A stretch of DNA of 64,000 bases from positions 34,038,001 to 34,102,000 of the forward strand of contig OZ320316.1 of NCBI GenBank assembly GCA_976226885.1, in the 5' to 3' direction. Shown here piece after piece: positions 34,535 to 54,123 of this stretch; position 1 is the first letter of the stretch; the number at the start of each line of letters is the position of its first letter. The notes below the pieces were generated by a model. The model saw only the letters and a list, made by a program, of their open reading frames with translations. It was not told the DNA's origin and searched no databases. The position numbers and the translations under genes were made by a program. Source of the DNA: Iphione sp. A-MEVVRFRX5 (lineage: Eukaryota).

Positions 34535-34874
34535 TTTCATTTCATGTATCTTTTATTAGGAACTAGATATTCACCTATCATATGATAGGGTTCTTATGTA
34601 TCCGTCTGGGGTATAATACCACTATCTATTATTGAGAATTGAGAGCCCGCAATACCCAGGATTGCCCCCTACTCTTATTTCAAATACATTTCTAAGGTCT
34701 TTTTTGGAGTAGAAAACAGAATCCTAGACACCCACAGCCTTTTAGGAGTTGTGGACCACTCTGGGTTAGGGCTACAATAAATCTGTCTGGTCTTGATCAA
34801 GAGTCCTAGGCCAGGGATTGAACCTGCGACCTCTCAGTCAGTGGACCAGTGCTATACCTCTGAGCTAACTCCCC
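34535..34874 (-). mobile_element. Intact tRNA-derived SINE (~340 bp)
   Basis: The - strand head GGGGAGTTAGCTCAGAGGTATAGCA...GGTTCAATCCC has Pol III A and B boxes, followed by a body shared with 24235-25144 and an (ATGAA)n tail. Confidence 0.85.
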
Positions 34875-35600
34875 ATCCAGATTTACACTTATCAAGTTAA
34901 CCTTTGACCTAACCTGTGTCAGAGGTCACATGTCATGCTCAGAAAGTATGCTTTTGATTAATTTGTATGTTACAGATTGGAACTCAAATTTTAAGACTTG
35001 TGTCTATCTGGACATTAGCCCACTTTACGTTTTATATTGGTTGCTATTTTGAAGGCAAGCATTAGTGATGCCATTAGTGATACCATTGGTGACCCTGACC
35101 TTGATATTCAGTATTTCACTGCAAACACTCTTAGTTTATCACAATTTCTTGCTCAAAAACGGAATTGACAAAATTACCATCTTGTTTGGATGGAAATGGA
35201 ATGCATTTCACCTTTGACCTTGTACCGCAATAGTGCAGTATGCAATATAATACCAATACAGTCTTGGTGGCTGGTATTGTTATGTGTGTACCGCATGAGT
35301 GGGGAATAAATGTAGGTCTGTGTACATGCAGTTCAAAATATATAGAGAAAATAACTACCTGGTTATGTGTTTTTAAGATGGGCTATTTCGCCTGGGTATC
35401 CTAAATTAATAGTATCCTTGCACAACAAAAATGTACATTAAAATGGTAAATTTTAGATATCTTAGATATCAAGTTTCATATCCATGCATGATTTCATGGG
35501 ATGCATATATTGCTACATGCAGTTTGAAAATACGAGATGTGTGTACAGTGACATGATCTGCCATATTTCTTTGTAGGTCAGCTAGAAGAGTGGACGCAAT

Positions 35601-38600
35601 ATGAATATCGATGCAGTGGTCTATGTCCGCCCCCCTGTCCGGGGGGAGACAGCTGCTCCATTGGAGATGGATGGTCCGAACCGTATCCTGACCAAAGCAG
35701 GAGGAGCTGCACTAGAGTACGTACATTCATGTATAGAGACCCCTCTGCATATGTACAACCAGTAACAAATCTTACCATTTCAGACAGCCTTACGCACATC
35801 TGTCAGATTTTGCATACATTTGAATGCAGATCAAGTAAGTAGTATTTAATTTGATATGATGAAACGCACTACGGAAAAAATGAAAGTAAAAAAGTCACAG
35901 AAATTCGAGTACATGACCAGCATGGCAGTTTCCTATCTTGAGAAATTGTGTCTGTCTTGAAGCCATCGATTTGTTAGTTTTAATCTGTCATTACCCAAAA
36001 TAAACCTATTCTCTGCAAAAGCAGTCAGACCGTCGATGTCCAATTTTGTGCTGTTTCAGAGTGCACGAACAGAGCAAAAAAGTAAATGTACCTTACTATT
36101 ACACTGTAAATGTACATTCATACATGCGTACATGTACCTGTAGTTACTTCGGTCAAACATTAGAGGCAATTACTTGTAGTATAAACATTAAAATTGGTAA
36201 CATTTTAGGTGTACAAGATCCTAAGAAGGAAACGGGAATGCGATTTGTTACATGTGGTATGCAAAACAAATGAGTCATAACAAACTCGGTAACCAATATC
36301 AAGATGCAAAATATTGTTACATATAAGGTATTTTGATAACAGCTGAGGTACATTACATTTATTGAGTTAATTTCAACCATGTTCTTCGTACTCCAGTGTG
36401 CAGCAGTTGTACAACGCCGGGACGCCACTCTCCGATGTTTTCCGGCGTTCTGTGGCTCCCCTGGTGGACCTGTTCATAGCTGGGTTCAATGTGTCTCTGC
36501 TTGTCACTGGCGAGAGTGGCTCTGGCAAGTCATATTTTATGGCTGGAGAGAACATCAGCAGGACGGGCACTGTCCCCATGTTAATGGAAGTCATATTTGA
36601 TCGTATACGTGAAGGTAATTTATAAAATGTCCTCAAAATTACACATAACTTCTCTGAAGTACATAAAATAATAAGATATAGTCATTATATGCAAGTACAC
36701 CTTATTCTTTGGCTATGGACTTGAGTACATACAGGGTATCAATATAGCCACCCTTCTTCACTCATCACATTTGCAAGTACACATGGAGTACTGCTGGTAC
36801 TTAAATTTTTGGCAAGAGCAGTTAACGTTTTGTAAGAGTGCCAACTTCTGAGTGGCAAAACAGTGCCATATGTAAGAGAGTGGTTTTTGTAAGAAGGTTG
36901 ATGATAGCTTTGAATAATGGTCCACATCTACTAGCTTCGTACAGGACACTCCAGTAATGCAAATGCTCTGTCACATAATTCATGGCACGTGACCGTCAAA
37001 TTACCGAAGGGACAAATTGAGGACATAACCACTGGGCACATGTCCACTTCATGTATGACTTTGACAGTTGTGTCTATTAATTTGGTAGATGCGCAGGTGT
37101 CACAGCCCATAGCACGTAGGTCTGATGCCCAGGTCACGCTGGAGGTTGTGGAAGTATACAATGAATTAGTGAAAGACTTGCTCCAGGTACCTGCACTCAG
37201 CCCACAGTACCTCAGCTTAGACGAAACCGCTACGGATGGAGTGCATGTGAAGGTACGCTGGGGTGTGGTGTAAGAGGTGCATGGACTGAATTTACTCACA
37301 AAGCATGTTTTGTTACCCTTTATGCTAACGAGAGGTAGCGAGGAAAACTTTATTTTACGTTGGAAGAACAACTGGAGGACTTCGACCACAACATTAAACC
37401 AAAAATATAATTGAGTTGGGGGGAAACATACTGGCATTTTCCGTTGCGAGGCATAAACAGATGCATGTTCTGCTGACCACTAGTCACCCTGCCGATGTCA
37501 GACTTTAATGGTCGATGCAAACATACATGTACCTTCTTTTCTGTCGACCCACACAGAACTGCAAGGTTGCGCCAGTGCGGAATGCCCAGGAAGGAGAGGC
37601 GTTGTTCAGACAAGCCTGGTCCAGACGGTCTGACCACTATACCGACTTCGGGCTGGCCAAGAACTACTCCTCCGTTATAGTGCATATAGACCTAATCATG
37701 GTTGGTGTTTGCTCATAACAACATTATCTGGCCCTTTTTTTCATCATCTGCAATACAGAATAATCATGTTTAACTATTTCCTGACCTATTTGTAGGCTCG
37801 AATAATAAAGCTCCTTGATTTGGGTACATTTCATAATTCTTTCTGATGTACAATTTCATGCAGTCAGAAGTCATGACATGTTTGAAATTAAGATGAGTAC
37901 ACCGTTTTAGTTGGATATATTTTATAGCAGATGTTACATTGACTTTTCGTTATGTTTTAAGCAATCAGCCGATAGTCTCCTGCCCAACAAATCACGTTTC
38001 ACTGTGATGGTAACACCGGGTGTGGAGAAGTTGGCTGGGGACACTCGTCAGTTGCGGGTCAGAGAGGGACCCACCTTGAGTAAGGGCATTATCGCCCTCA
38101 GTCAACTAGTGGCAGCATTGGCAAACCAGCCCTACGCTGACCGTTGCATTAATTACAGGTAATTTCTATTTCTTGCTTTTCACGCTAATTTTTAAATACA
38201 CGATCTTTTGTTAAAAAGAATTATTTCACTACATTGTCAGTAGATCTTTACCAACCTACCCCTGTAATGATAGTTATATAATTGGGAATTCTTATTCCTA
38301 TAATTAGTCACATACCTCTCATACAGGAGTCAATCGAAAATCTATTGAAGATTAGCACAGAGCTGATAAGAAGTGCTGGCCTCATCTCACCACACTATTA
38401 GCATAGTCACCCGCCCAATCTACCACAAATACAATACTTGTCTCCATGCGTTTGTGATGAATAGTGACACTGACAACTTGATCGTGTGGCATATAGATCC
38501 CCCTTTGGTAAAATAATGCTATACACGTATGTATTTCGGTCAACATCTTTTAAAAACAGAGACTCCCAGCTAACGTCACTGCTGAAAGATGAGCTTGGAG

Positions 38601-41600
38601 GCAATTGTAAGACGTTGGTCCTGCTGTGTCTGAGGCCCTACTCCGACCCGGACAAACTAGACCCTATCTTACGCTTTGTGCAGCAGTCTACACGCGTCGT
38701 CAACTTTCCCATACCCAATGATCCTTTCGCCCAGGTATGACATGTCCATTTGAGCACCTCAGAACACAAGGTTGTAATGCGAATACTATTCTGTCATGGT
38801 TGATGGATGGATGGCCTAAAAAAACAAAAATAATAAAAAAATAAAGATTTTATGTGTATATCGTCTGTTCAGTTATGGATACCTGGACCCGTCTGATACA
38901 TCCATCTATTACTAATCACATGCACGTCGTATGATAACTCATTTGGATATGATACATACACGTAAATATAATTTATATCGTTGACATTCTGTGTGAAATG
39001 GTTTACTATCAGCAAATGTCATAAAAAATTTGCCCTTTTTATCATCATTATAACCCCATTTTAGTTTAGTTTTACACAGCAACTAGCCGCAAAAATGGAA
39101 TTTTTTTTCTGAAACGTCCTCAGTGGTAACTATTTGATTTTGTAAAACCAACATGACATTGTGACTGCTGGGCTGCACATCCCCATTTTTTAAGTTTGGC
39201 TGTTGTTTTTTCCCTGTTTAGCAACTGCTCACCCAGTACCGTGCACAGATCCTGAACCTCCGGCAGCAGCTCGGTTGGAGCACAGGGGCCACAGACCCGG
39301 GCAAGCTGCATGACCTACACGATGAAATGAGGCGTATCCGCACGGAAAACGTAAAGACACCTTTTCTGTTATAAAGTTTCTGAAATGAAAAACAATTGTT
39401 GCTCTTAGTGTCAGCAAAATTTTCGCTGTAGATCATTACTTTTATTTCTATTATTGAGCTGATTTCTCTAAATAGTTTTCTAGTTTATGCTATAATCCAT
39501 GACAATGCAAAATGGAGTTTATTTTACCCACTCTTCCTCGTGTTTCCTTATAGATAATAATCCTATGTTTTGTATGTTCAAAAATCTCATTTCACGCTGA
39601 GTGTCCATGTTAGATAGTTTCGGCCATTCACACCCTCATTGTCCGTGTAAAATGTTTTTTCTATGTCCCATCATGGTAATATATATATGTTCTCCTGTTC
39701 ATTTTAGCTTATTTGATATCCCTCTTTAAAGCTTTTGGTCCGTATTCTAAGTTATGTCCACCCTTTTCCTTTTGCAGGTGACAATTCGAGACCAGAATGA
39801 TCGTCTCCAGGCCAGGCTTGACCATCTCCAGAGCAGGTTTGGGAACCTGGCAACTACCAAGACAGACCTCTCCTCCCAGCTACTCCTGACAGAGGAAGAG
39901 AAGCTGAAGGTAGAACTAACTCACCTGCCAGGATTCGATATCTGCACTTGAGCAACTTACCTGGGAATGCAGTCGGGATTCAATGTCTACACAGCCCTAA
40001 ATGTCAGGACACATTTTTCCCGAAACCACAGTCGTAACGTAGTTCTGAGACTCAATATTCAAATAAGCTCTATTTCCAAATATTTAACATAGTGCTGACT
40101 ATTCAGATATCGATTCCTGACTACATGTAGAGAATTTTTAACCTTTAGTACCAGGGGTAGACACAAGCTAAATTGAAAGCAAGTTGTGTGTGAGGGTCTT
40201 CTATAGTGGCGCCACCTGTACTGTATCTCTGATAAACATCTGTGCCCATACCCTGGTGCAAAACCATGACTACATTTCACTGGTAATTTCATGTAATCTA
40301 CTTATTTAAATTATTGTGCAAACATATGCATATATCCTCAAGCATGTTATTTTTTTGCTATCATTTATGTGCTTTGCATATCGCTGTATGCCATTCTGTC
40401 ACGAATATATGTAAGGAGTTATTATATCCATTTTTTTTACTCATACTCATGCAGTAACTGCCTAACTACAAAAACCCTTTGTCTTTAAATATAGACAAAC
40501 TAAACCCTTACTTTCACACTTTTCAAATGATATAACCGTGGTTCCTGGAGACTTGCAATTATTAGTATCATCAAAGATGTGATGCCACACCAGCTGAATA
40601 TATTATACACTGAAATAGTGCACTGTAATAGCCTCAACTGGAACACGATAAAAACCCATTTCACAGAATACAAATTTTTAAAAAACTGTTGTTAGAGCAG
40701 ACATCCCGATGAAACCGGTGGTAATTACAGTATTATATCTTCAATGGAACTATAACTATAGAAATAGATTCATAAGCACGAAGCAAGGCTGTTATGAAAG
40801 CCCCTCCCCCCCACCCCCATCAGGCCCAAGTAAGCTGCATGCAAGAGTAGGCTTCCTGGAAGGTTTGGATTATTTTGTAGAAATTAGAAAGAAGGTGTCT
40901 GAAATAGCAGCATCCCTTTTATGGAAACTAGAAAGGTGGGTCCAGTCTCGATGCTGACCTGGATGGAGTTCAGATGTAATATTCTGACACTTGTGATACT
41001 GGAAAAGCTATTGTAGGAGAAGTGGAAGAATATGTCCACTTATTACAATAGTACAGGTTCTTATTTCAGCCAATGAAAATATACGTGCACATAGTGTTCA
41101 TAGGTGTCTTACCAAGCCTAAGCAGCATCTGGGATCACTCTGATTAAAGTAGTAGTATATTATGAGGTAAATTGTATAACACCTGGTGGTACCACTATGA
41201 GTCATTGCTGATGCAGCCTTTAAAATTAAGTCGAAAGCTTCCACTCCCTTGAATAAGGTACAGTTGAATGCCACATGACTGTATAATCTAAAGATTTCGT
41301 TATCATCGTAGGTTTCAAAAACATTGGTGGAAATGCAGATAGAGAATAACAAATTGAAAGAAGAAATGGAAGCTGCCAAATTCGAATTGACCAATAAGGT
41401 GAGCGCATAACTATTCCAGAAACATGAATAGCCCATTACATTAATTTTAATGCCCAACATTTTTACTTCTATAATTCAACGCCACAGAATATGACTACCT
41501 ACATGATTTATTACTTGGTTATTGCTTATTTAATTTGCCCAAGTTTACGTGAATGATTATTTGACATTATTATTTCTTGCAAACTGGTGATGTAAGCTAT

Positions 41601-41866
41601 AACCAACCATTACTGAATCTCGAAGCTGTTTAGGTAGAACTATTTTACTCTTCTCGTAACACCACGATCAGATGTGGTTGTACTGGACAGTCACCTGAAG
41701 TAAATACACATATGGAAGTCAATTTTGAAGTTTCAAATGAACTAATGGGAGTACATTAATAGGGCAATTTGTGGTCAAAAGATAGAAACTGAAGTGTTTC
41801 TTTGACCTAGTTGTGACAATCAGAGAGAGAGAGAGAGGGAGAGAGAAGAGAGAGAGGGAGGGAGAG

Positions 41867-41916
<50 letters not shown>

Positions 41917-44900
41917 AATAGGCTAGGGGAAAACAAGGGAAAGAAGTATAGAAGGGAAGGCAGGTGAGGAGACGAAAAGGTGATGAGCGGAAAAGAGGGG
42001 GCGATACGTATATTACAGCTGAAAATCTGTCAGTAGATTCTCACTGAATATGATCTTAGCAAAAGCTCCCTTATTAACCCAATATTGACAATACTCTAAT
42101 ATTTCTTTTCACAGTTTAAGCATAACTTATAGTGTCAGCATTGTCCAACTGTGCCTATGAATGCATGCATGAAGATTATGTATCCCTCTTTGCGTTGAAC
42201 ACAGATCATTCACTTGGAAAGTGAGCTGACTCACCTTGATGTCAGTAGGGACAAGCACAGTAAGGCAGCTGCAATTGCAGAAGAACGACTTGCCACCATG
42301 GAACGAGATCGTAAGCAGATGGCTGATGAGTACATTGGTCTTAAAGCCAATTACAGTGCACTAAAGGAGGCCCACGACAAGGAGGTAAGTGTTCTATTTG
42401 TGGATTAGAAGTGTTGAATAAATGAAAGACTAACTCACATCTTGGATTCAAGGTGGCAGAAGGCTAATATTAACGTCTCAGAATGTAGTATACATGTACA
42501 AAACACAAGTTTTAGCAACTTTTTTCCTAAGTTAAAGGAACAAATATCCCAATATGTATTCATACTAGATAGAAAAACTAGATTTGAACATTTCTGTGGA
42601 TCTCCCACACATCACGGCATGGTCACAATGAGGACTGAATAAATATTACCAAACTTATGTTCATTTGAACTGGCCAGGCTGACAACAATAGGAATGAAAG
42701 CGGTCACAAATGATAAACTGCTGGTAAGAGTAATGTAAAGTGATGGTGAAGATTAACATTTTTATTTCTCCCTAAACAAATTGTGTTAACTGTGGGACAT
42801 TAAATAGTCTTTCATATTATCATTGTATCCAGAATCTTAGATTTCAGCCATTTGTATTTATTTTGACATCCCATTCAAACCGGATTGGTTATTTAAAGTA
42901 TTTCAATAGATAAACTCTTGTGCAACGTGGCAAACGTGTACGTCTTGTCGGTGCAAAAAAACAATAGATAAACTCTTATACAGGTAGGAAAGAACGAAGA
43001 GCTTAGTGTGGAGCTGCTCAATCTTGTCAATGCCAAAGCTGTGTTACTTCGGCGGCTTGAAAAACTGGAGAGCAGCCCAAAGCAACGGCTGAACCCAGAT
43101 GCTGAGCTGGAGCGAGTGAGAGCCATGGTTAGCCGCATGTCCACGAGAAGGGTAAGAAAACTAGGGCATTGACCATGTTCTTGTGAAAAAAACAAGATGG
43201 ACTCACTGTAATAAGATTTACTAACGGTTATTTAAATGGTTAGCTTGAAATATAATATATTGTTTTCAGTGCGTTTAAAGGCATATGGGGACCACCAAAT
43301 CTGCTTTTCAGTAACGTGATTTTACTCCACTAATTAATCCCAGATAATTTTAAAACTACTAAATAAAAACAGCATTGAGTGTGAAGTTTTAATTGACAAC
43401 TCCGCATGTTTTTCTGGTTTTTTTTTGTTAATTTATCACATGTTGCATCTGAACCAACTCAGCCCCTCTGTAATTCATTTGCCTTTAATTACTTGTTGCT
43501 CTTAGAAACTGGTACAAGTGTCTCTTGAGATATTCAATACATTAATGGCAAATTTACAAACTTGTCTGATTTCTCCCTCAGCCTGAAGATTTAGAAGCCT
43601 CTCAACAGGACCTGGCACGAACCGAGCAAAACGTAAGCCTCATTGCACGCTTATTAGCAGTTTAAATATATTTTCATATACATGTACTCATTTCTACACA
43701 ATTTCTCTCTGTACCCTAATGAAAGCTAGCTTGGTGGAAACACATCGATCATGCAATAACCGACCTAAGCATCATTTTTATTTACCGAATTGTGGTAAGA
43801 TACGAAGTTAGAGGCAAAATATGTAATACTTTCTCAATGAGATCGATACCCATTAGTCTGCATTTATTCCAAAGTTAACATCATACCGGAGGATTATAGA
43901 GAAACGTTATATCATGTATTGTTGCGAGTTGTGGTGTCGGAATGGAACACAAAGTATACATGTATTTCTCTTTGAAAAATCGTAACAGGTGTTTGGCTCG
44001 TATGTACAGCTTGAGGATGAAATTAAGGCCTTGAAGAGACAGCATGCTGAGGAAGTCCACAAACTTGAGCGTAGGCTGTAAGTACATATAAATGCAATGT
44101 AAGGCATACATATTAAACAGTGGAATGCCATTCCATAAAAAGATCGAGGCTGCAGACAAATCACAGCAGTACTTTATATATGTAGAACTGAATATATCTT
44201 ATTTCTTGTTCATTAATGACCGATGAATGGCAAGCCTGTTTATCTCAGCTCATAGAGTCACACATTTTATACCACACATCCTGGATATGGATCCCATCCA
44301 TGTCTAAACAGAGTCGTGTAACTATTGAAATTTCTGTTTCCATGGCGTGGCATTTCGCTGTATCGGGATCGCATGCTGAATAATGGGAATCAAATTTTGC
44401 ATATACTGTTCTTGGATGGTTTTTATTTTTACTACCACAATGCTAGTATTGCCCTTTAATTTCAGTGGCTTTCGCACAGTGTTTCTCTTGGTTGTAATTG
44501 CATTTGTCTTTATCATTACCTTGAAATAATAGTTTTTTATCGTAAAATATACTTGTTTTACACATATGCTTTAGTTCTTTTCCCCTTATTTTCTGTGCAG
44601 TACACGAAATAACATAATCACCAGATGATGTTTTTGATTTGTTATTTGTGTGTTTAGATGGGTTTTTGTTGTTCTATATGTTAACACAAAACCTTTGCAG
44701 CACTACTATGCGGAAAGAGGTCCATGATAGTAGAAACATTGCCAGGGAGAGGCAACGGAAAGCTTCCCAGATTAATGCAGTAAGTCCTGAAAAACTACTA
44801 ACTGCTGCCGTCACAAGTTATCAATCTCACGATCTAAAAACCCCTAGACGGAGCAGGTCAAATGCCTTTCTTGAAATGCAGAGCCCATACTGTAATATTC

Positions 44901-47900
44901 CCTTGCTGGGTAATAATAAGACAGATTTAACTTGGGTTTTCTACTCCTTTACTTCACTGCACATGTGGTGTTACTCCATGGCTCCTGGGTGGTGGTGTCT
45001 CACTCAGTGTTCACCCCTAACATGTTACCCGGTGGTACTGGTACACTACATCCCTTCCTTTCTTCAGAGACAAAACTTCCTATCATCCCTGACTTCAGAT
45101 GTACTTCAATACACAGTCATGATGTCCTAGATCACCCAGTGTTCCTATACTACTGAGTTCATAACCTTCCTTTGATTTCACAGAGTACTGCTCACTGTTG
45201 AAATTAGGTGCGCTCTGTGAATCCTTTTTCTTCCCTTTCACATAAATGAATGTGGCCTCTGCTGTTCCATCTTTTGTCTTCACCTTCTCATCCTCCATCT
45301 TCCTTGTTCTCTCCTCCCTTGTCATTGTTCTGTCCTCTGTCTTCAGAGTTGCATCCTTCAAATTCTTTTCCATATTTTTCTTCACCTTCCTCTTCACCTT
45401 CCTTTTCGCATCTTCCTTCTCAGTTGTGCCAGAATGTTGTCTGATGATGGCTTCATCACCCTTTTCACATTGGCAACATGGTAGCCTCCTCACTAGTTTG
45501 GCTTCCAGCCTAGTTGCCTCATTCACATGAGATTTCCTCTGGACCTCTTTCCAGTTCCCAATGTTAGTGGATACATTGGAGTCCTTCTGTTCAATGTCAG
45601 AGTCATTCCCCTTTGCAGTAGTGGAATGCACTCTTGGTGACTCAGGTGGTCCCACCCGTAGCAAATTCAACCTCTCTGCAGTCTGTTTACCAAGTAGAGT
45701 CCTTCCAGTCCCCTTGATAACAGTAAACTCATCTCGACAATGTTCCTTGCTGGCTGGACACACTATCTCAGCCTCAAATATTCCCAATACCTCTATGGGC
45801 TTGACCTGCCCATACGTAAATAGCTTCTTGTTGGACAGTCGGGACACACACTGCACTTTGTTGCATTTCATCATATTCCAGGTTGCCTTGTCCATGATGT
45901 TACAGGATGCACCTGAGTCAATCAACACAGATCTCAGTTTGACTCCTCCAATCTCCAGGTCAACCATACCATCCATCTTCTCTGCCCCTACTGCAAAGAT
46001 GTAGTCTCCATAACCTCCAACCTGTCCACTGCTTGATGCACCATAGTTCACTTGATATGTTTTTCCCTCTTCTTGGTGCTTCTCCCTTTGTCGCTTCTGT
46101 CGAGTGTCTTGGCCCTTGGTGCGACAGCATACTGCAAAATGTCCCATTCTCCCACATTTGCTGCATTCTTTACCTTGAGCAAGGCATTCCTGATCCTTTG
46201 CCAAGTGATCTTTCTTGTTGCAGCGGAAACATCTCTTTCTGCTGCCATGTCCACTGCTTCCTTCTCTGGTTGCACCTCTGGCTCCCTTGTGTTCCTCCTT
46301 GTTCCCCTTTGAGAAGTTACACTTCCTGTGTACTGCATTCACTTCAGTTGATGCCTCAGTCCGGGTCATCGACTTCATCTGTGCCTCAACTGCTTCGTAG
46401 GCACGCGCAATGTCCTCCAAGTCCTTCAATGTAGCATTCCCTGTCTTCTCCAAGAACTTGCGTCTCAGCCGCTGTTCCCGACACTTGTCGATCAGCTGAT
46501 CACGGATAGCCTCGTCAACATCCGTGAACTCACACGAGACAGCCTTGTGACGTAGCCGACACACAAACTGGTCGACTGTCTCCCCAGCTCCCTGCTCTAG
46601 CTGACGGAACAGGTGCCTCTCAAACGGTACGTTCACAGTCGGTATAAAGTGTGCGTCTAGTCGATCAATACACTCCTTGAGGGACATACCCGTCTCCTCA
46701 GGTACCAGAGTGTAGAACACCTCCTGTAGTTCCATACCTCCAGTGTGTAATAGGAGAGCAACCTTCTGCTCCTCCACAGTTACACCACGTGACGTCACAT
46801 ATAGGTTGAAAGCTCGCTTCCAACGCTTCCACCTTGCACATAGAGTAGTAGGCTCTCCCTTGGGGTCGAAGCAAGGAAGACTACTCACCTCCAGTGTCTT
46901 TAGGCCATCGACAGTACCAGTGTTAAAACCACTGCTGGAACTATTGCCACTTGCACGTTCAGCCATACTGCGTGTCTCCGTCGGTGCCATGATGGATCCA
47001 GACCAACACAGTATCTAGCTATGATAATTGAAATAATATACCACCACAGTATTTAAACAAAACCAGGTACCACCACACTTTTAGGCTACCTATACATAAA
47101 ATGCACCAACCACCTGAAAAACTAAAATATTGTCAACTACAGGATCAATACACAGTTCAATATCAGGCAAACATACAGGTACATGTACACATAAAATACT
47201 CCTGAAATAAAATGACAAAGTTAATGTCATAACAGGTTCAAGACCTCTGAATTAAATCAAATGTCCTTCAAAGTCCAGGTTCTAAACCTCAGAATTTAAT
47301 CAAGTGTCTTTTCAGTTCAACCACAGTACCAATGGTACTACCAGACTCTCAGTCTTTGTAGATTTCAGTATTTAAACTCCAGTTGTCACACATTAAAGTT
47401 CAGTATTTAAACTTTCCTGATCAAACAGCACACCCCAACGTCCTCAGTTCTCTTTGGGGTGTTCTCAGACACCTCTGTAGACAGTCCTTGCCGACTTTTG
47501 ACAACTTGTTACGCAGAACGGCGGCTTGTGACGACTTTTCCTCCTTGTTTGGGTCGTCAGCAACACACTCAATCAGTTGCACACTCCTAGACAGGTTCGC
47601 CGACTTTTGACAGCTTGGTATACACTGCCACGCCTCCTATAGGGTTCCCATGCTTGTAGACTGGCCGGCGAACACTTGACAGCTTTTGCGGCCTTGCCTC
47701 CAGGGTGACCACGCCTACCCACGCTATATTTTCGCGCCCAATCGCGATGACGACGTCCTCCTTGGCTCAGCTGGCCACCAACGCTATCTCTGGCGCGAAA
47801 ATTGCGAAAATCTTTTGACAACTTTTCCTGCTTGTCTGGGTAGTCGGCACACTCCAGACAGGCTCCGCCGACTTTCCTCCAGTTCCCACACATCTAAACG

Positions 47901-50900
47901 ATATCTCGGCGAATTCTGACGACTTTTACTCCTTGTCTGGGTTGTTCCCACACTGCAGACAGGCTTCTCCGACTTGTCATCCCTCTCTGAGCCGTCAGCA
48001 TCACTTTCAATCAGTTCCCACACATTGTAGACGGTCCTTGGCCGATTCTGACGAGTTTTACTACTTCTCTGTATTCAAACATTGTCTCCACACTTGTAGA
48101 TACACCTCGACAACTTTGACAGCTTTTGCGAGCTTGCCTCTTACTTGACCACCCCTCCCGACCGCTACCCACGCTAGTTTTGGCGCCAAAATCACGATAT
48201 GATGCTCCTGTGGGTCCCGAGGGATTTCCTGCCTCCCCGGCTGGCTGAGCGTGGTCTACTAACCACTTCACGAGTGTTTATAATCACAATTTCCTCATGT
48301 AACCTGCACACAAATGTGAGGAGCGTCCTTCTCTGTGTCTAACCACACTTTTACCTTGAAATCTTCTCTCCTTTCTAAGGAAATACAGCATTTAAGCTAA
48401 GCAAAGTCAGTATTCAACATGGCGGCCAACTCGGCCGTTACAGTGGGGAGCAACATGATTCAACACTCACCACCACTATTTCACACATATAGTTACTCAC
48501 ATATGCACAATAGTCCCTCTTCTGTGTCTGTCCACAATCCTGTTGATGTGTCCTCTCTCCTTTCTAGGAATCCAGCATTTAAGGTAAGTGTCCTACTTCA
48601 CTCCTCCTTTGTTGTGAGTAACTCCCCAGGCAGTGCACAAAACTTGATTTCCTTGGTAAATCCCTGTTTAGGACTCACTCAAAACTTGTTCCATTGATGC
48701 TCCTCATGTTCATCCTCGTCGCCATTGTAATATTCCCTTGCTGGGTAATAATAAGACAGATTTAACTTGGGTTTTCTACTCCTTTACTTCACTGCACATG
48801 TGGTGTTACTCCATGGCTCCTGGGTGGTGGTGTCTCACTCAGTGTTCACCCCTAACATGTTACCCGGTGGTACTGGTACACTACACATACTGATCTCTTT
48901 AGGTAGATTAGGGTCATCCCGAACACCTCTGTGTGAATGTGGTGAATACAGTATCGGTGCTCTCAAATGTGGTGCCCTTGCTGGACTAAATTTAAAGGCA
49001 AAATGGAATAAATTCTATCCACAGTGGTGCTAAATAGGGGGCAACTACCTGTCAATCCACGGAAGACTATTTCCCCAGTGTTAATGTTTAAAATAGTCAA
49101 CATCTGTTGTCTTCCCGCCTTTTCCTATCAGCACTTCCCGTGTTCGGGTGATTTCTAACCGTAGACTACCATTGAATAACTCGTACTCACTTTTTGACAT
49201 CATAAAAAGTATAGAAGTACAGTGAGCTCTCACTTAGAAGACCACCAGTGGCGCCGGAGAAATATGTTCTCTGTTAAGGTCTGGTCTGCACTGTAGTTTG
49301 TACTAAAAAGAAATATACTTTTGGGCTGCTAAGACTTGGTCTCTACCCCAGTCTGGTCTCTTCTGTGAAAGTCGACTTTACTCCACCTTGCGGCCTCTTT
49401 GGCCAACACTGGACACGATTTTGTACTCGCAAGCTGTTGCCGTAATGTACCTTTTCTAATGGAAAACAGGCTGTCCATCTGTTCTCAGTTATGACTTGGT
49501 TCCACGGGAAGACACTAAACATCTTTCTCTATAGAATAATTCTCTGAGTTCGAGCTACTTTTAAAGTCAGGTGCAGGTGTTACCTTGGAGAACAATATCT
49601 ACAAATTCTCTGATGGATCTACTCTTTTCTTTCACATTTCTGTTATCTCTCATGCAGCGCCTTATCACCCTAAAGGGGGAAGCTGACCATCTCCAGAACC
49701 AGAACAACAAACTCCAACATCGTCTGAAGGATTCCATCGACAATTTCCGGTCCCGTCTGGTCAAATACATCGATGACATAGCTGTGAGTTAATTGAAGTT
49801 TGAATACATGTACTAAATGGCGTCCCACTTTATTTTTACTCGCTTTTTTTCCCAGGGGAACAAACAGCAGAATATGCATTTGGGGAAGGGGAAGATAAAA
49901 TATTCACCTGGACTAGAGAAAACAAAATGATCACCCCTTCCTGATTCCAGCCATTGCTTGCACCACCATTGCTTAAATTCACAGTCATTATTTTCTTCTT
50001 CGTGTTTTGCAACGATATACATGTATATGTTCACGAGAAATCCACGCCAAAGCATGATAGCTTCGGATACTTCACAGTGGTATATGTTCACCGGGAAAAG
50101 GTATGAATTGCTATAATTCGAGCTGGCTTTGGTGCAAGTTAGTTATGGAGAGAGTTGGTTATGGGACGAATTGTCCTGGATCTGTGTTTTTTTTCAATGC
50201 CCCCTTCTAATCTCAGATGTCTTTGTCTCTGTGTTAAGGCCAAGGTTCATTTGTTCTTTGCTTCTTCCTTTAGGAATACATGGATAGTCGTGGTGACAGT
50301 CTGCGCAAAGCAGGTGAGCCAGATATGAGGCAGTATGTTGATGGGATGTTGGCTGATATGCGGAAAGCTCACAGGCAGCGAGAGGAGCAGCTCAGTCAAG
50401 CTGCACAGCAGTACTGCAATCAGCTCAAGGCAGTAACACACACCCATGAGCAAGTTCTCATTGCTTATAGGTCAGTGTTAAAGATATGTAAAGTTTTTAG
50501 AAGATAATGTGATTAATGTTACAAATATGCTCTAGGCAGAAGGATTGATTCATAAATATAATAGCGCTTAATATTTTAAGTGATATTTAGCGTAATTTGC
50601 CAGTGTGTTTTTAGTAATTGCTGTAAAGTTAGAATTTTGTACTTCAGGTGGTCTATTAATATGCCTAAATTGATATGGTACAATTTCTTGATTAACAGTA
50701 AAGTAGTGCGAGAAGTTCCTCTGTACATGTACATGAAATGAGATATAAAAATTGATATCGTTTTAAAAAATGTTCCTTTTTACCTTGTTCAAATGTACCC
50801 AAATAGTGAGCTGAGGGAAAAACTAGGAAACAGTCAGTTAAACGACCTCGAACAGGGTCCAGATGTGGGTGAATTAACCCTAAATGAACCTGAGTTTGCG

Positions 50901-53010
50901 TCTGCTCATCAGAAAGAGATTGAAAAGTTACGTGAGCAGCTTGAACGTGCTCACCGCCAGTTGGAATCACTAAAGTTGGGCGTGAGTAGAAAATGTTTAG
51001 TACTGACCTCATATACTTTATACTTTCAGACCTCAATTCTTTGAATCTCTATGGTTTTCCAGAATTTTGCCTGAACTACGGAATGATTTGAAGAATGAAA
51101 TCGTAGTAAAATATAAAATAGTAAAGCTATTGTTTTTCTCATGTTCAAAGTATTGAAAAACTCCAACTTTTGAATACTGAAACAGAGTAGAGAGGTTTGA
51201 CTGTAATATCCGTCACAAGGCAATCACTTGTCGAAAGTAGGTCAATTTTATCTCAGCAATTGGTGAGCGGTTACAAAACTTCATAACTTTTATCCACTAT
51301 TTGCTAACCTTGAATTTCCATACGGTTTGTTAAAATATGCAGTCCATGTAATCAAGTTCACACTACTTTATATACAGTGGAGACACATTTACTCTTCGGA
51401 TATCTAATTACAAAAGTGGTTTATCCTTTGACATCCTCAATTGTAATTGAGGATCTGAATGCGTCCAGTTAATATTAGAACACGTTTAATTAAGATTAGG
51501 CCATAACTAGAGCGTACAGGAAATTCATATTAATTTTTTGCTGGTTACAACAGAAAATATACGTCTTTTTTCAGCTTAAAGTCGATCATTTAGGTGATGA
51601 AACTAAGACCAAGTAAGTATCTGTCTTTTCCTTTGGCCTCGTAACTGATCTTACTGTATCGTTGCTCTGACCATAAGTAAGTCCTTTGTCCGTTCTTAGT
51701 GCTGTTTTCGTTTGGTAAATACTGAATAGTTCATTCCCAATTTTTATCACCCCTTCCTTCCTATCATTTGTAAAAACCCCAGCTTCTTATCAATTACAGA
51801 CATCTCTCGGTTCTTTAAAAAAAACTATCAGTATTACAGATATGTTCGAGCCATATATGGAATATTTCCTTATGTGGACTAGTTCCTTTAAAAAAAAGTG
51901 TCCTCTACACGTCTCTCCATCGGCAAGAAGTATACTGTCGTGTTTCAAATCGCTTCGGCCACCATTCAATCACGTTCATCGATATTCATGATTCAGGCGT
52001 CCAGATCCAGGGCAACCTGGGCAGCAGACATGGGCAGCATTGAGACGCCAGATGAGAGAGTGGTCTGAGTCCACGCAGCAAGAGCTGGAGCAGGAACGTG
52101 CACGCTTACTCACCAACAACACGCTCCTGGAGGAGGAGAATAGTGAGCTGCGCTCCTATATCGAGACTCATCTCAAGAGGTGGGTCAAAGACAGAGTACT
52201 CTACGTAATGACAGCATTGCACCATGATTACGAGGCCAGGAAGCAAACGCAGCGCTACTGTGTCTGATCTCCAATAAATATATGGTACTTTACATACCAG
52301 CAAGGTATTAAATCATAACCCCGACAATATCACCAATGAATAGACTGGACTGTTAAAAGTGGCCCACCTATCTAACCTGGACTAATGCTAGTCCTGCGTT
52401 TTGTTGATGAAATGAGGACCAATTTGTATTCCCAATGAATTAGTTGATATTTGATGAATTACAATGAATTTCCACTGCCAAACGGTAAAGTTTCAATGAG
52501 TGAATGTCACTGGGAACCTTGGAGGGATATTAGGTAGAACTTGACTGAACACTTTACAGGATGTCTTATGGCTGCCATGATAAATTCTGTCAAATGGCCA
52601 TATTTGAATATATCTGAAGTTAAACGATGTCATCATAAGACATTAAATTGAGGTTACCAGGGATGGCCTTAAATGACCTGAAATAATATACATGATGGCA
52701 CGCGTCGTACCACTATCACACCAAAGGCACCATTATATGATTAACAATATTAACATTGTGTTACTTCATATGAGATAACTGCACAAGTATGTAGCCTGGG
52801 TTGCTTGAGGAACTCACCTGTACAAACCGAGATTCAGTTATTAGTTTCCGGATTTCACGCCAGGTGTCAGCAGGTCTAGAATTTTACGTCGGTCAGAGAC
52901 ATTGTTAACATTGATCACTTTAATATATATACATGTATACACAAGTGCCTTCGGCACTTGCATTCGAATTTGATACTCTCTCTCTGTTTTTCTTTCTTGC
53001 TCTCTCTCCC

Positions 53011-53048
<38 letters not shown>

Positions 53049-54123
53049 TCTCTTATTGCTTATTGGTATATCAACACACTTCCTTTTGTAAAAGGCTCAC
53101 CGATTGGCCGGCTCCCCTTCAGGCATGCACAGTGGCTAGAAAGTATGGGGACTACTTCCAAGAGCTGTTATATAAGTGTGGTGTAACTATCCCGACTGCA
53201 TCGACCTCTGTACTGTCTTTCATAACCAGACAGCCATCTGCACGCGTCAAACACTCCTCATTCCTTTCATCTTTTATTGCTATTCCGCCTTAGTCACACG
53301 TCTTCCAAGTCCAAGTGAGCTTTTGACCCATGGAAATTGGGAGAGGCTGTGGGGGCTGATACCGGAGTTCGTTTAACTGTCAAAAGTTAGGTTAACTGAG
53401 AGCTGTTGACAGTATCCCACTGAGAAGGGAACAACTTCTGGTGCTGAGCCAACCCACAGGCACAAATAAAGTCTTTGGAAAGAAGACCAGGTCCAAACCG
53501 CTCAGCACCACATTCTATCTAATTTTGGCACCTCCCTTGGCCGCCCCAGCAACATCTGATGACAAGGTAATCAACAGACAGATTGCACTCAATTCCAGGC
53601 CGCCACTCAGGGGCGCAGGTCGCGGTTGTTGGTGTTGAGTTGATATTACTAGATGTCATCGGCCCCAGCCCTTGGAGTGACCCGGTTATGTNNNNNNNNN
53701 NNNNNNNNNNNNNNNNNNNNNNNNNNNNNNNNNNNNNNNNNNNNNNNNNNNNNNNNNNNNNNNNNNNNNNNNNNNNNNNNNNNNNNNNNNNNNNNNNNNN
53801 NNNNNNNNNNNNNNNNNNNNNNNNNNNATGTCTATAAGCTGGCCATGTCTGCTATATAGTCCGTCCATAACGTGGCGTTCCAGGGAACCAAAGTTTGAGA
53901 ACTGCAATGTGTGTACAGTGTCCTGGCAACTTGTGCCTATCTGGACCATCTCGTCTAACCTTTATAACTGTTGTTTTCACTATGTACAATATTGTTTATT
54001 TGTCCATGTTTCAGGTATAAGGATGAGATTAGCCGGCTGCGAGAGATGATTGGGGTGACGGATGCTGGAGGTCTGGTCAGCCCAGGACCGGTCACACGGA
54101 GAGGTGTTGATCGCCTGCGATAG
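35601..54123 (+). CDS. CCDC78: CCDC78-like protein with N-terminal kinesin-like domain, ~918 aa, 20 coding exons
   Basis: Exons 35601-35716, 36397-36614, 37089-37252, 37557-37700, 37962-38158, 38560-38734, 39222-39350, 39778-39909, 41312-41398, 42205-42384, 42984-43151, 43582-43632, 43989-44077, 44701-44779, 49658-49783, 50274-50470, 50807-50981, 51575-51612, 51997-52179, 54015-54123 (2757 nt, GT-AG, phases close). DUF4472-like VSKTLVEMQIENNKLKEEMEAAKFEL. The C-terminus WAALRRQMREWSESTQQELEQERARLL...YIETHLKRYKDEISRLR resembles vertebrate CCDC78. The exon 1 donor and exon 3 acceptor are less certain. Confidence 0.85.
45095..46990 (-). CDS. Gag-protease ORF (631 aa) with in-frame deletion of RT/RNaseH/integrase core
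   Basis: Gag WKRWKRAFNLY...FERHLFRQLEQ, two Cys/His knuckles (CFRCNKKDH..C, CSKCGRMGHFAVC), aspartic protease LIDSGAS. No YxDD or RNase H/DDE motifs before the stop. Confidence 0.92.
   Translation of the reverse strand: MAPTETRSMAERASGNSSSSGFNTGTVDGLKTLEVSSLPCFDPKGEPTTLCARWKRWKRAFNLYVTSRGVTVEEQKVALLLHTGGMELQEVFYTLVPEETGMSLKECIDRLDAHFIPTVNVPFERHLFRQLEQGAGETVDQFVCRLRHKAVSCEFTDVDEAIRDQLIDKCREQRLRRKFLEKTGNATLKDLEDIARAYEAVEAQMKSMTRTEASTEVNAVHRKCNFSKGNKEEHKGARGATREGSSGHGSRKRCFRCNKKDHLAKDQECLAQGKECSKCGRMGHFAVCCRTKGQDTRQKRQREKHQEEGKTYQVNYGASSSGQVGGYGDYIFAVGAEKMDGMVDLEIGGVKLRSVLIDSGASCNIMDKATWNMMKCNKVQCVSRLSNKKLFTYGQVKPIEVLGIFEAEIVCPASKEHCRDEFTVIKGTGRTLLGKQTAERLNLLRVGPPESPRVHSTTAKGNDSDIEQKDSNVSTNIGNWKEVQRKSHVNEATRLEAKLVRRLPCCQCEKGDEAIIRQHSGTTEKEDAKRKVKRKVKKNMEKNLKDATLKTEDRTMTREERTRKMEDEKVKTKDGTAEATFIYVKGKKKDSQSAPNFNSEQYSVKSKEGYELSSIGTLGDLGHHDCVLKYI
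48711..48724 (-). other. Primer-binding site complementary to tRNA-Ser(GCU) 3' end
   Basis: TGGCGACGAGGATG, 1 nt inside the 5' LTR. It complements the recalled metazoan tRNA-Ser(GCT) terminus ...CATCCTCGTCGCCA. Confidence 0.8.

What the first reader, a model, noticed from the sequence alone, without database searches (positions are those of the whole stretch)
35601..38734. CCDC78 carries a pseudo-kinesin head: P-loop kept, switch I/II lost
Seen: the first ~338 aa follow kinesin motor order: VYVRP, GFNVSLLVTGESGSGKSYFMAG (P-loop), LEVVEVYNELVKDLL, TLSKGIIALSQLVAAL, INYRDSQLTSLLKDELGGNCKTLVLLCLRP, VVNFP. Where NxxSSRSH should be it reads TDFGLAKNYSSV, and where DLAGSE should be it reads VTPGVE. 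~580 aa of CCDC78-type coiled coil follow. Known: switch I/II are required for microtubule-stimulated ATP hydrolysis, and mammalian CCDC78 as I recall it has no motor domain. Inference: an ancestral CCDC78 is a nucleotide-binding, non-motile kinesin-fold scaffold that may anchor basal bodies or centriole-amplification sites to microtubules. I cannot confirm offline whether this architecture is already reported.
Basis: partly seen in the sequence, partly recalled or inferred. Interest (0 to 1): 0.72.

Follow-up and report, generated by a model that had tools for sequence, protein, structure and literature searches.

The report
Annelid CCDC78 with degenerate kinesin head
This is a normal, intact annelid copy of the cilia gene CCDC78 that still carries the family's old kinesin-like head, with the ATP-binding loop kept and the hydrolysis switches degraded; databases already annotate this domain layout in many animals, so it is mostly ordinary.

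Summary
Positions 35601-38734 hold six GT-AG exons with matching phases, giving a 338-residue kinesin-like head. Thirteen further exons, up to 54123, encode a DUF4472/CCDC78 coiled coil. The model is 896 aa in total.

The protein aligns end to end with about 900-aa RefSeq "CCDC78(-like)" proteins. It groups with annelids in a gene tree that mirrors the species tree.

The head is a full-length kinesin fold. Its motif states are:
- The P-loop is kept (GESGSGKS).
- Switch I is degenerate (GLAKNYSS where NxxSSRSH is expected).
- Switch II has lost its Asp but keeps Gly and Glu (VTPGVE).

These states belong to the family or the lineage, not to this gene alone. No member among 60+ has SSRSH. Annelids share (V/I)TPG(V/I)E.

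Kinesin+DUF4472 is already annotated from sponges to sharks, lungfish, salamanders and alligator, and is published for Tetrahymena. This is therefore a new member of a known kind.

Two points seem unreported:
- The head is retained in several vertebrate lineages, although a 2025 paper says it is absent from vertebrate Ccdc78.
- The P-loop is broken in tetrapods that still keep the head.

Loss of motor activity is inferred, not shown. No RNA run for this genome was listed.

The parts
35601..35716 (+). Coding exon 1: start ATG and beta1 with YVRP in the place of the RxRP (N4) motif. An acceptor-like site at about 35576 hints at an upstream non-coding exon.
   Evidence: the N-terminus MNID matches orthologues
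36397..36614 (+). Coding exon 2: alpha1-beta3 and the P-loop GESGSGKS.
   Evidence: Pfam Kinesin E 1.4e-11
37089..37252 (+). Coding exon 3: beta4 region with the VEVYNE..DLL motif.
   Evidence: Pfam Kinesin E 7e-4
37557..37700 (+). Coding exon 4: alpha3 and the degenerate switch I (TDFG-LAKNYSS).
37962..38158 (+). Coding exon 5: beta7, the partly degenerate switch II (VTPGVE), L11 and alpha4.
38560..38734 (+). Coding exon 6: L12/alpha5 (YRDSQLT..LGGN), beta8, alpha6 and a neck-linker-like VVNFPIPND.
   Evidence: Pfam Kinesin E 5.5e-7
39222..39350 (+). Coding exon 7: neck coiled coil (QLLTQYRAQI...), contiguous with the head in all orthologues.
39778..39909 (+). Coding exon 8: coiled coil.
41312..41398 (+). 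Coding exon 9: first part of DUF4472.
   Evidence: Pfam DUF4472 E 5.8e-10
42205..42384 (+). Coding exon 10: second part of DUF4472.
   Evidence: Pfam DUF4472 E 2.1e-9
42984..43151 (+). Coding exon 11: coiled coil.
43582..43632 (+). Coding exon 12. It is short; its borders were chosen by splice sites and frame only.
43989..44077 (+). Coding exon 13.
44701..44779 (+). Coding exon 14. The following intron holds an LTR-flanked insertion (LTRs at 44891-45050 and 48726-48885).
49658..49783 (+). Coding exon 15.
50274..50470 (+). Coding exon 16.
50807..50981 (+). Coding exon 17. The donor is uncertain: 50974 is an alternative, and a small exon may be missing before the next one.
52025..52179 (+). Coding exon 18. 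The acceptor is uncertain (51997, 52025 or 52028).
54015..54123 (+). Last coding exon, including the stop. The intron before it holds the N run 53692-53827, which was left as it is.

Best explanation
Shown: the window holds the single-copy annelid orthologue of CCDC78. It is a gene of about 18.5 kb with at least 19 coding exons, encoding about 896 aa. The protein has an N-terminal 338-aa domain that is a complete but divergent kinesin motor fold. A conserved neck follows directly, and then the DUF4472/CCDC78 coiled coil. The head belongs to a distinct, old kinesin-like lineage that is always fused to DUF4472. That lineage is defined by a GE[ST]xSGK[ST] P-loop, a T[DT]xG loop in place of the start of switch I, and xLPGxEKL in place of DLAGSER.

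Inferred: the P-loop and the adenine-side (R)xRP motif are conserved, while the gamma-phosphate sensor is gone. The Ser-Ser-Arg of switch I and the Asp of switch II are absent in this gene. The head therefore most likely still binds nucleotide but hydrolyses it very slowly or not at all. On this view it serves as a static or nucleotide-gated microtubule-attachment module, not a stepping motor. The coiled coil dimerises it and recruits partners such as CCDC33. By analogy with Tetrahymena I7LVY1 and vertebrate CCDC78, the likely site of action is the capped distal tip of motile cilia and/or sites of centriole amplification in multiciliated cells.
For: - Gene model and splice phases.
- Pfam Kinesin and DUF4472 hits on exons.
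- Nine about 900-aa orthologues scanned here: eight carry both domains, and the sponge Dysidea protein matched Kinesin only in that scan. In the wider search, nearly all of the first 80 or so listed proteins have both domains precomputed. RefSeq names many of them CCDC78(-like).
- The window head scores 421.7 bits against the family HMM and 163 bits against a canonical kinesin HMM. Canonical kinesins score 140-200 bits on the family HMM.
- The family profile matches solved kinesin motors over the full length at E 8e-59.
- The AF2 model of the Branchiostoma head has pLDDT 85.6, and Foldseek finds kinesin motors at TM 0.75-0.88.
- Motif table over 60+ members.
- The head is as conserved as the tail: 42-48% against 40-43% identity to lophotrochozoan and deuterostome orthologues. 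This argues for purifying selection.
- The gene tree mirrors the species tree, and the window groups with Capitella and Paralvinella at SH-aLRT 95.
- Transcript-type contigs with an AATAAA signal and a terminal A-run carry head plus DUF4472 in one 964-aa ORF, in four runs of another animal.
- Ciliary-tip localisation of the Tetrahymena kinesin-CCDC78 protein and of vertebrate CCDC78: PMC10522465 and PMC12796433.
Against: - No RNA run of this genome was listed, so the single transcript is inferred from orthologues and exon phases.
- No biochemistry exists for any member, so loss of ATPase and motility is deduced from motifs alone.
- Gly and Glu of switch II and the family-specific loops are conserved, which leaves room for a non-canonical catalytic cycle.
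- The key kinesin-1 tubulin-contact Arg in L12 is present here but variable across the family, so microtubule binding by the head is not certain.
- Headless vertebrate CCDC78 still reaches the ciliary tip and bundles microtubules with CCDC33 (PMC12796433), so the head is not needed for that in those species.
- No X-box (RFX) motif was found near the start.
Confidence: 0.6

Rival explanations
1. The head is still an active, unconventional motor or ATPase. The conserved family-specific loops (T[DT]xG..., xLPGxEKL) would substitute for the canonical switch residues.
For: The P-loop, the switch II Gly and Glu, alpha4 and L12/alpha5 are strongly conserved, and the head is as constrained as the tail. 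Cnidarian, starfish and protist-like members keep the switch I Arg.
Against: In this gene, Ser-Ser-Arg of switch I and Asp of switch II are all replaced (KNY and V). These residues coordinate Mg2+ and close the phosphate tube in all studied kinesins (established knowledge). The replacement residues vary between phyla, which is not what a new catalytic solution would show.
Confidence: 0.15
2. The head is kept for a role other than microtubule binding, for example nucleotide-dependent autoinhibition, or docking of a partner in the tip complex or deuterosome.
For: The L12 Arg used by kinesin-1 to contact tubulin varies across the family. Headless CCDC78 binds or bundles microtubules with CCDC33 (PMC12796433).
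Against: The alpha4 and alpha5 elements that form the tubulin interface are among the best conserved parts of the head. Legal et al. suggest that the Tetrahymena member binds central-pair microtubules.
Confidence: 0.15
3. The head is a decaying relic in this lineage, with no function left.
For: This annelid lineage has the most degraded switch II, (V/I)TPG(V/I)E. Capitella also has GK-A in the P-loop. Whole-head loss has happened in several vertebrate lineages.
Against: The 338-codon frame is open, all six exons have canonical splice sites, the P-loop is intact, and the head is 48% identical to other annelids, as conserved as the tail.
Confidence: 0.07
4. Two neighbouring genes, a kinesin-like gene and a CCDC78 gene, have been wrongly read as one.
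For: No transcript data for this genome. A prokaryote-style gene caller split the homologue into two ORFs on metagenome contigs L006 and L007.
Against: Exon 6 ends in phase 0 without a stop, and exon 7 continues the conserved ...NDxxAQ-xLxTQYRA... junction found in all orthologues. There is no start codon context or terminator between them. mRNA-type contigs in another animal join both parts. Most of the proteins listed in the wider search, including RefSeq models from many animal phyla, join them.
Confidence: 0.03

Closest known systems
RefSeq/UniProt 'coiled-coil domain-containing protein 78(-like)' proteins with a kinesin domain, e.g. Capitella teleta CAPTEDRAFT_226630, Paralvinella palmiformis, Lingula anatina, Mytilus edulis, Branchiostoma, Chiloscyllium
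   Same: The length is about 900 aa and the order is the same: kinesin-like head, neck, DUF4472, long coiled coil. Identity is 37-49% end to end. They share the P-loop type, the lack of SSRSH and the xPGxEKL switch II. The two annelids share (V/I)TPG(V/I)E.
   Different: Only species-level divergence. The protein of this genome itself is not in the searched collections; the best exon hit was 55-70% identical.
Tetrahymena thermophila I7LVY1 (kinesin motor + CCDC78 domain; ciliary-tip cap-complex candidate; Legal et al. 2023, PMC10522465)
   Same: The papers describe the same two-domain layout. It is linked to the ciliary tip, and Lee et al. 2025 (PMC12796433) regard it as a distant CCDC78 orthologue.
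   Different: It is 1066 aa. I could not retrieve its sequence, so the states of its switch motifs were not compared. Its function is also only inferred from proteomics.
[quoted passage not shown]
   Same: The DUF4472 coiled-coil part is orthologous, and the gene tree follows the species tree.
   Different: These proteins lack the head entirely. The window protein keeps it.
Immotile or catalytically impaired kinesins such as KIF7/Costal2 (cilium tip organiser) and KIF26A/B (from my own knowledge)
   Same: They have a kinesin fold and are used as a microtubule-binding or scaffolding module without normal stepping. KIF7 also acts at cilium tips (He et al. 2014, cited in PMC10522465).
   Different: No specific sequence relationship was seen. 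The CCDC78-head profile scores about equally (175-202 bits) on kinesin-1, -2, -3, -4, -7, -8 and -12 structures. The tail domains also differ.

Membership tests
Kinesin superfamily (motor-domain fold, PF00225) | Sequence and fold homology over the whole roughly 330-aa motor domain | tested here: met
   Exon-level Pfam hits are collinear with HMM positions 50-116, 120-164 and 279-308. The family profile matches the KIF4 motor at E 8e-59 over 309 positions. The AF2 model of the orthologous head matches kinesin motors at TM 0.75-0.88.
Kinesin superfamily (catalytically competent motor) | N1 P-loop GxxxxGK[ST] | tested here: met
   The window has GESGSGKS. The family consensus is GE[ST]xSGK[ST].
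Kinesin superfamily (catalytically competent motor) | N2 switch I NxxSSRSH | tested here: not met
   The window has GLAKNYSS in those columns. None of 60+ family members has SSRSH.
Kinesin superfamily (catalytically competent motor) | N3 switch II DxxGxE (DLAGSE) | tested here: not met
   The window has VTPGVE: Asp is lost, Gly and Glu are kept. Other members have D, E, R or K at the first position.
Kinesin superfamily (catalytically competent motor) | N4 RxRP adenine-side motif | tested here: inconclusive
   The window has YVRP: the second Arg and the Pro are kept and the first Arg is Tyr. In the family alignments this motif reads R-x-R-P in most members.
Kinesin superfamily (catalytically competent motor) | Microtubule-stimulated ATPase and motility | not testable with these tools
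   This needs a purified protein.
CCDC78 family (DUF4472, PF14739) | DUF4472 domain above the Pfam threshold | tested here: met
   Two exons score 40.2 and 38.4 bits (cut-off 26.6) and cover profile positions 8-37 and 35-97.
CCDC78 family (DUF4472, PF14739) | End-to-end collinearity and orthology with proteins named CCDC78 | tested here: met
   BLASTP covers 1-891 at 821 bits to Capitella. The tree follows the species tree and the window sits inside annelids.
CCDC78 family (DUF4472, PF14739) | Localisation at deuterosomes or the ciliary extreme distal tip | not testable with these tools
   Known only for Xenopus, mouse and human (PMC12796433).
Any named kinesin family (kinesin-1 to -20) | Clear affinity of the head to one family | tested here: inconclusive
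   PDB profile scores are flat across families. Wickstead et al. 2010 list the Capitella orthologue Capsp_226630 as 'ND, divergent', and it carries no family assignment. Kinesin-17 members there have canonical scores of 449-500, unlike this family. No full phylogeny was run, for lack of labelled reference sequences.

The most novel reading that the evidence does not exclude
The CCDC78 heads form an old, unclassified kinesin family, set aside as 'divergent' in the 2010 kinesin census. On this reading it became a nucleotide-binding pseudo-motor that anchors the cap at the extreme tip of motile cilia. Its decay can be followed stepwise:
- Protist-like and cnidarian members keep parts of switch I and II.
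- Bilaterians lose them.
- Tetrapods then break the P-loop.
- The head is finally lost several times independently (ray-finned fishes, turtles, snakes, birds and, from the literature, frogs and mammals).
The well-studied headless CCDC78 of Xenopus and mammals would then be the decapitated remnant of a kinesin.
Probability: 0.4. Interest if true: 0.5.

Novelty: new member of a known kind. Interest (0 to 1): 0.33.

Why it matters
For this window the finding matters little: it is an ordinary orthologue whose domain layout the public databases already annotate. For the family there are three modest points:
- It shows that CCDC78, a protein of ciliary-tip and centriole-amplification biology, descends from a kinesin.
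- It corrects the published generalisation that vertebrate Ccdc78 lacks the kinesin domain. Sharks, rays, lungfish, coelacanth, caecilians, salamanders and alligator are predicted to keep it.
- It offers a natural series for studying how a motor becomes a pseudo-enzyme and is then discarded.

Invertebrates with large multiciliated cells, such as annelid trochophore larvae, would be good systems to test what the head does.

Tried and rejected
- RNA evidence in this genome: two run searches listed nothing.
- Kinesin-17 as the home of this family: rejected. Kinesin-17 members in Wickstead 2010 have canonical HMM scores, while the Capitella orthologue is listed as 'ND divergent'.
- Tetrahymena I7LVY1 and other named protist members: not retrieved. 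Long hits of the exon search were ordinary kinesins without DUF4472. The profile word search listed only animals in its top 120. The Atlas search gave only the molluscan cluster and generic kinesins. Two unnamed protist-like metagenome members served as a partial substitute.
- RFX X-box scan as a sign of ciliary regulation: 8 matches against 4.9 expected, none in the 1 kb before the ATG.
- tRNA-like look of 34790-34870: ARAGORN found nothing.
- Structure prediction of the window's own head: not done. The spliced protein has no reference, and I did not type it. The Branchiostoma orthologue was folded instead.
- A literature search for DUF4472 found no paper.
Full report
**1. What is in the sequence**

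The window is animal DNA with short exons. It has three N runs, which were left untouched.

Reading the DNA and joining the pieces at GT-AG sites with matching phases gives these exons: 35601-35716, 36397-36614, 37089-37252, 37557-37700, 37962-38158 and 38560-38734. Together they make 1014 nt, or 338 codons, without a stop. The finding's start is the ATG and its end is the last base of exon 6.

Pfam scans of the unspliced exon translations gave:
- Kinesin PF00225 for exons 2, 3 and 6 (E 1.4e-11, 7e-4, 5.5e-7), at collinear profile positions.
- DUF4472 PF14739 for two downstream exons (E 5.8e-10, 2.1e-9).

**2. One gene**

A search of 1.84 billion representatives with exon 2 found proteins of about 900 aa whose match lies at residues 40-110, as it does here.
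- Eight of the nine scanned carry Kinesin plus DUF4472; the sponge Dysidea protein matched Kinesin only.
- Most are named CCDC78 or CCDC78-like in RefSeq. They come from bivalve, amphioxus, Nematostella, sea urchin, starfish, shark and sponge. The hemichordate and flatworm models are unnamed.

tblastn of three of them against the window found collinear pieces from residue 1 to about 890, spread over 35601-54081.

I chose splice sites by frame, site quality and orthologue length. The result is a 19-exon, 896-aa model.
- It aligns in a single BLASTP piece over 1-891 with about 900-aa orthologues: Capitella 47%, Paralvinella 49% (partial protein), Lingula cluster 46%, Mytilus 45%.
- The head-tail junction...NDPFAQ | QLLTQYRAQI..., is conserved in all orthologues.
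- Two junctions near exons 17 and 18 remain uncertain.
- Intron 14 holds an insertion flanked by two identical 160-nt repeats.
- The last intron holds an N run.

Indirect transcript evidence comes from four Logan contigs of 3.7-3.9 kb, from four runs of another animal. Each holds one uninterrupted 964-aa ORF with both domains. One ends in AATAAA followed by an A-run and another ends in adapter sequence, which is what mRNA-derived contigs look like. Several further Logan clusters of 905-1005 aa lie on contigs of 2.9-4.7 kb.

**3. Whose gene**

A maximum-likelihood tree of 40 full-length members follows the species tree: cnidarians; echinoderms with hemichordates; chordates; lophotrochozoans.
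- The window groups with Capitella and Paralvinella (SH-aLRT 95), next to Owenia. The genome is therefore an annelid's.
- This was the quick search. The careful search did not finish in the time allowed.
- The gene behaves as a vertically inherited single-copy orthologue.

**4. The head**

- An HMM of 20 CCDC78 heads scores the window head at 421.7 bits over its full length. An ad hoc HMM of eight canonical kinesins gives 163 bits. Canonical kinesins score 140-200 bits on the family HMM.
- The family profile matches solved kinesin motors over about 309 positions (KIF4, E 8e-59). Kinesin-1, -2, -3, -4, -7, -8 and -12 all fall within 175-202 bits, so no known family stands out.
- AlphaFold2 of the Branchiostoma head, using the 20-row alignment, gave pLDDT 85.6 and pTM 0.87. 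Foldseek returned only kinesin motors, at probability 1.0 and TM 0.75-0.88.
- Wickstead et al. 2010 list the Capitella orthologue (Capsp_226630) as 'ND, divergent' with an HMM score of 25.7, against 400-560 for classified kinesins. Kinesin-17 members there have canonical scores. The lineage has thus stayed outside kinesin classification.

**5. Motifs**

The following comes from alignments against canonical kinesins.

| Motif | Canonical | This window |
|---|---|---|
| P-loop (N1) | GQ[ST]xxGK[ST] | GESGSGKS |
| Switch I (N2) | NxxSSRSH | GLAKNYSS |
| Switch II (N3) | DLAGSE | VTPGVE |
| Adenine side (N4) | RxRP | YVRP |

P-loop:
- The window has GESGSGKS, and GE[ST]xSGK[ST] holds in invertebrates, sharks and lungfish.
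- In caecilians, axolotl and alligator the Gly before Lys is Arg or Lys, and the alligator also ends in Trp.

Switch I:
- No member among 60+ has SSRSH.
- The preceding T-D/T-x-G is a family signature.
- The Arg survives in cnidarians, starfish and two protist-like members.

Switch II:
- The family pattern is x-L-P-G-x-E-K-L.
- The first position is Asp in sharks, lungfish, amphibians, alligator, starfish, hemichordates, flatworm and acoel.
- It is Glu in molluscs, sea urchins and most cnidarians, and Arg in tunicates and amphioxus.
- It is Val or Ile, with Thr-Pro following, in this window, Capitella and Paralvinella.
- Gly and Glu are kept almost everywhere.

Other elements:
- The adenine-side motif is YVRP here and RxRP in most of the family.
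- alpha4 and L12/alpha5 (..NY.DSKLT.LL.D.LGGN) are well conserved.

The head is as conserved as the tail, at 42-48% against 40-43% identity to lophotrochozoan and deuterostome orthologues. It is therefore under constraint and is not decaying in invertebrates.

**6. Mechanism (inferred)**

In studied kinesins the switch I serines and Arg, and the switch II Asp, Gly and Glu, sense the gamma-phosphate, hold Mg2+ and close the site for hydrolysis. This is established knowledge.

With Ser-Ser-Arg and Asp replaced but the P-loop intact, the most likely state is nucleotide binding with little or no turnover. The head would then be a static or nucleotide-gated microtubule-binding head, dimerised by the neck and coiled coil.

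The literature places the family at cilia:
- The Tetrahymena kinesin-CCDC78 protein I7LVY1 drops at least fourfold in cilia lacking the tip protein FAP256. It was proposed to bind central-pair microtubules in the cap (PMC10522465).
- Vertebrate CCDC78 marks the extreme distal tip with CCDC33, bundles microtubules with it, and also marks deuterosomes (PMC12796433).
- A 2026 preprint adds another pseudo-enzyme, Jhc1, to that tip domain, but does not discuss a kinesin head.

None of this tests the head itself. An unconventional active cycle, or a role not involving microtubules, remains possible.

**7. Distribution and novelty**

The profile word search lists Kinesin plus DUF4472 proteins in these groups:
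- cnidarians, an acoel, a flatworm, annelids, molluscs, echinoderms, hemichordates, amphioxus and tunicates; a brachiopod (Lingula) was identified by cluster look-up;
- among vertebrates: sharks, rays, lungfish, coelacanth (partial), caecilians, salamanders and alligator.

DUF4472-only proteins of about 550-640 aa are listed for sturgeons, bichir, gar, bowfin, teleosts, turtles, python and birds. Alligator has both forms.

Lee et al. [quoted passage not shown] That holds for frog and mammals, but not for the lineages above as RefSeq predicts them.

Two unnamed metagenome members look non-animal:
- One lies on intron-poor contigs, where a 404-aa kinesin ORF abuts a 549-aa DUF4472 ORF.
- They have the GESGSGKT P-loop, A-R-S in switch I, and NVAGSE or MTAGME in switch II.
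- They suggest that the fusion and the family signature predate animals and that the switches decayed stepwise. Their origin is unknown, so this is a lead only.

The architecture is therefore known. This gene is a new member. The pseudo-motor description, the vertebrate retention and the tetrapod P-loop decay appear not to be discussed in the papers I could search.

**8. Limits**

- The spliced window protein could be used only inside scripts, so Pfam, PDB and AlphaFold were run on exons or on orthologues.
- No labelled all-family kinesin phylogeny was run.
- The sequence of I7LVY1 was not obtained.

Noticed in passing
window 44891-45050 and 48726-48885: Two 160-nt direct repeats, 100% identical and 3835 nt apart, flank an insertion inside intron 14 of the CCDC78 gene. 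A 631-aa ORF lies on the minus strand at 45095-46990. This matches the young LTR element that another first-stage note flagged.
   Followed up: partly
window 28682-31507 (minus strand): A 941-aa ORF with a 306-aa ORF next to it lies about 4 kb upstream of the gene. Another first-stage note flagged it as a YR retrotransposon. I did not examine it.
   Followed up: no
L006 949-3809 and L007 938-3798: Marine metagenome contigs carry a 404-aa kinesin-like ORF that overlaps by 4 nt a 549-aa DUF4472 ORF. This is probably one intron-poor gene of a unicellular eukaryote, split by the gene caller. It has the family P-loop GESGSGKT and more canonical switch remnants.
   Followed up: partly
P0210, P0213, P0216, P0219, P0230 (caecilians, axolotl, alligator): In tetrapods that keep the head, the P-loop Gly before Lys is replaced (SRKS, SKKS, SRKW). 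Sharks and lungfish keep SGKS. This looks like relaxation before the head is lost.
   Followed up: partly
P0011 (Ruditapes XP_060564516.1), residues about 175-200: The RefSeq model lacks the switch I segment and has unrelated residues there. Its Pfam kinesin match is split in two. This is probably a missed or wrong exon in the annotation.
   Followed up: no
window 35566-35600: A good acceptor-like site (tttctttgtag|G) lies 24 nt before the ATG. The first coding exon may therefore be preceded by a non-coding exon, with the promoter further upstream.
   Followed up: no
window 53692-53827: An N run lies inside the last intron of the gene. It was left as it is, and the last exon (54015-54123) lies beyond it.
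   Followed up: no
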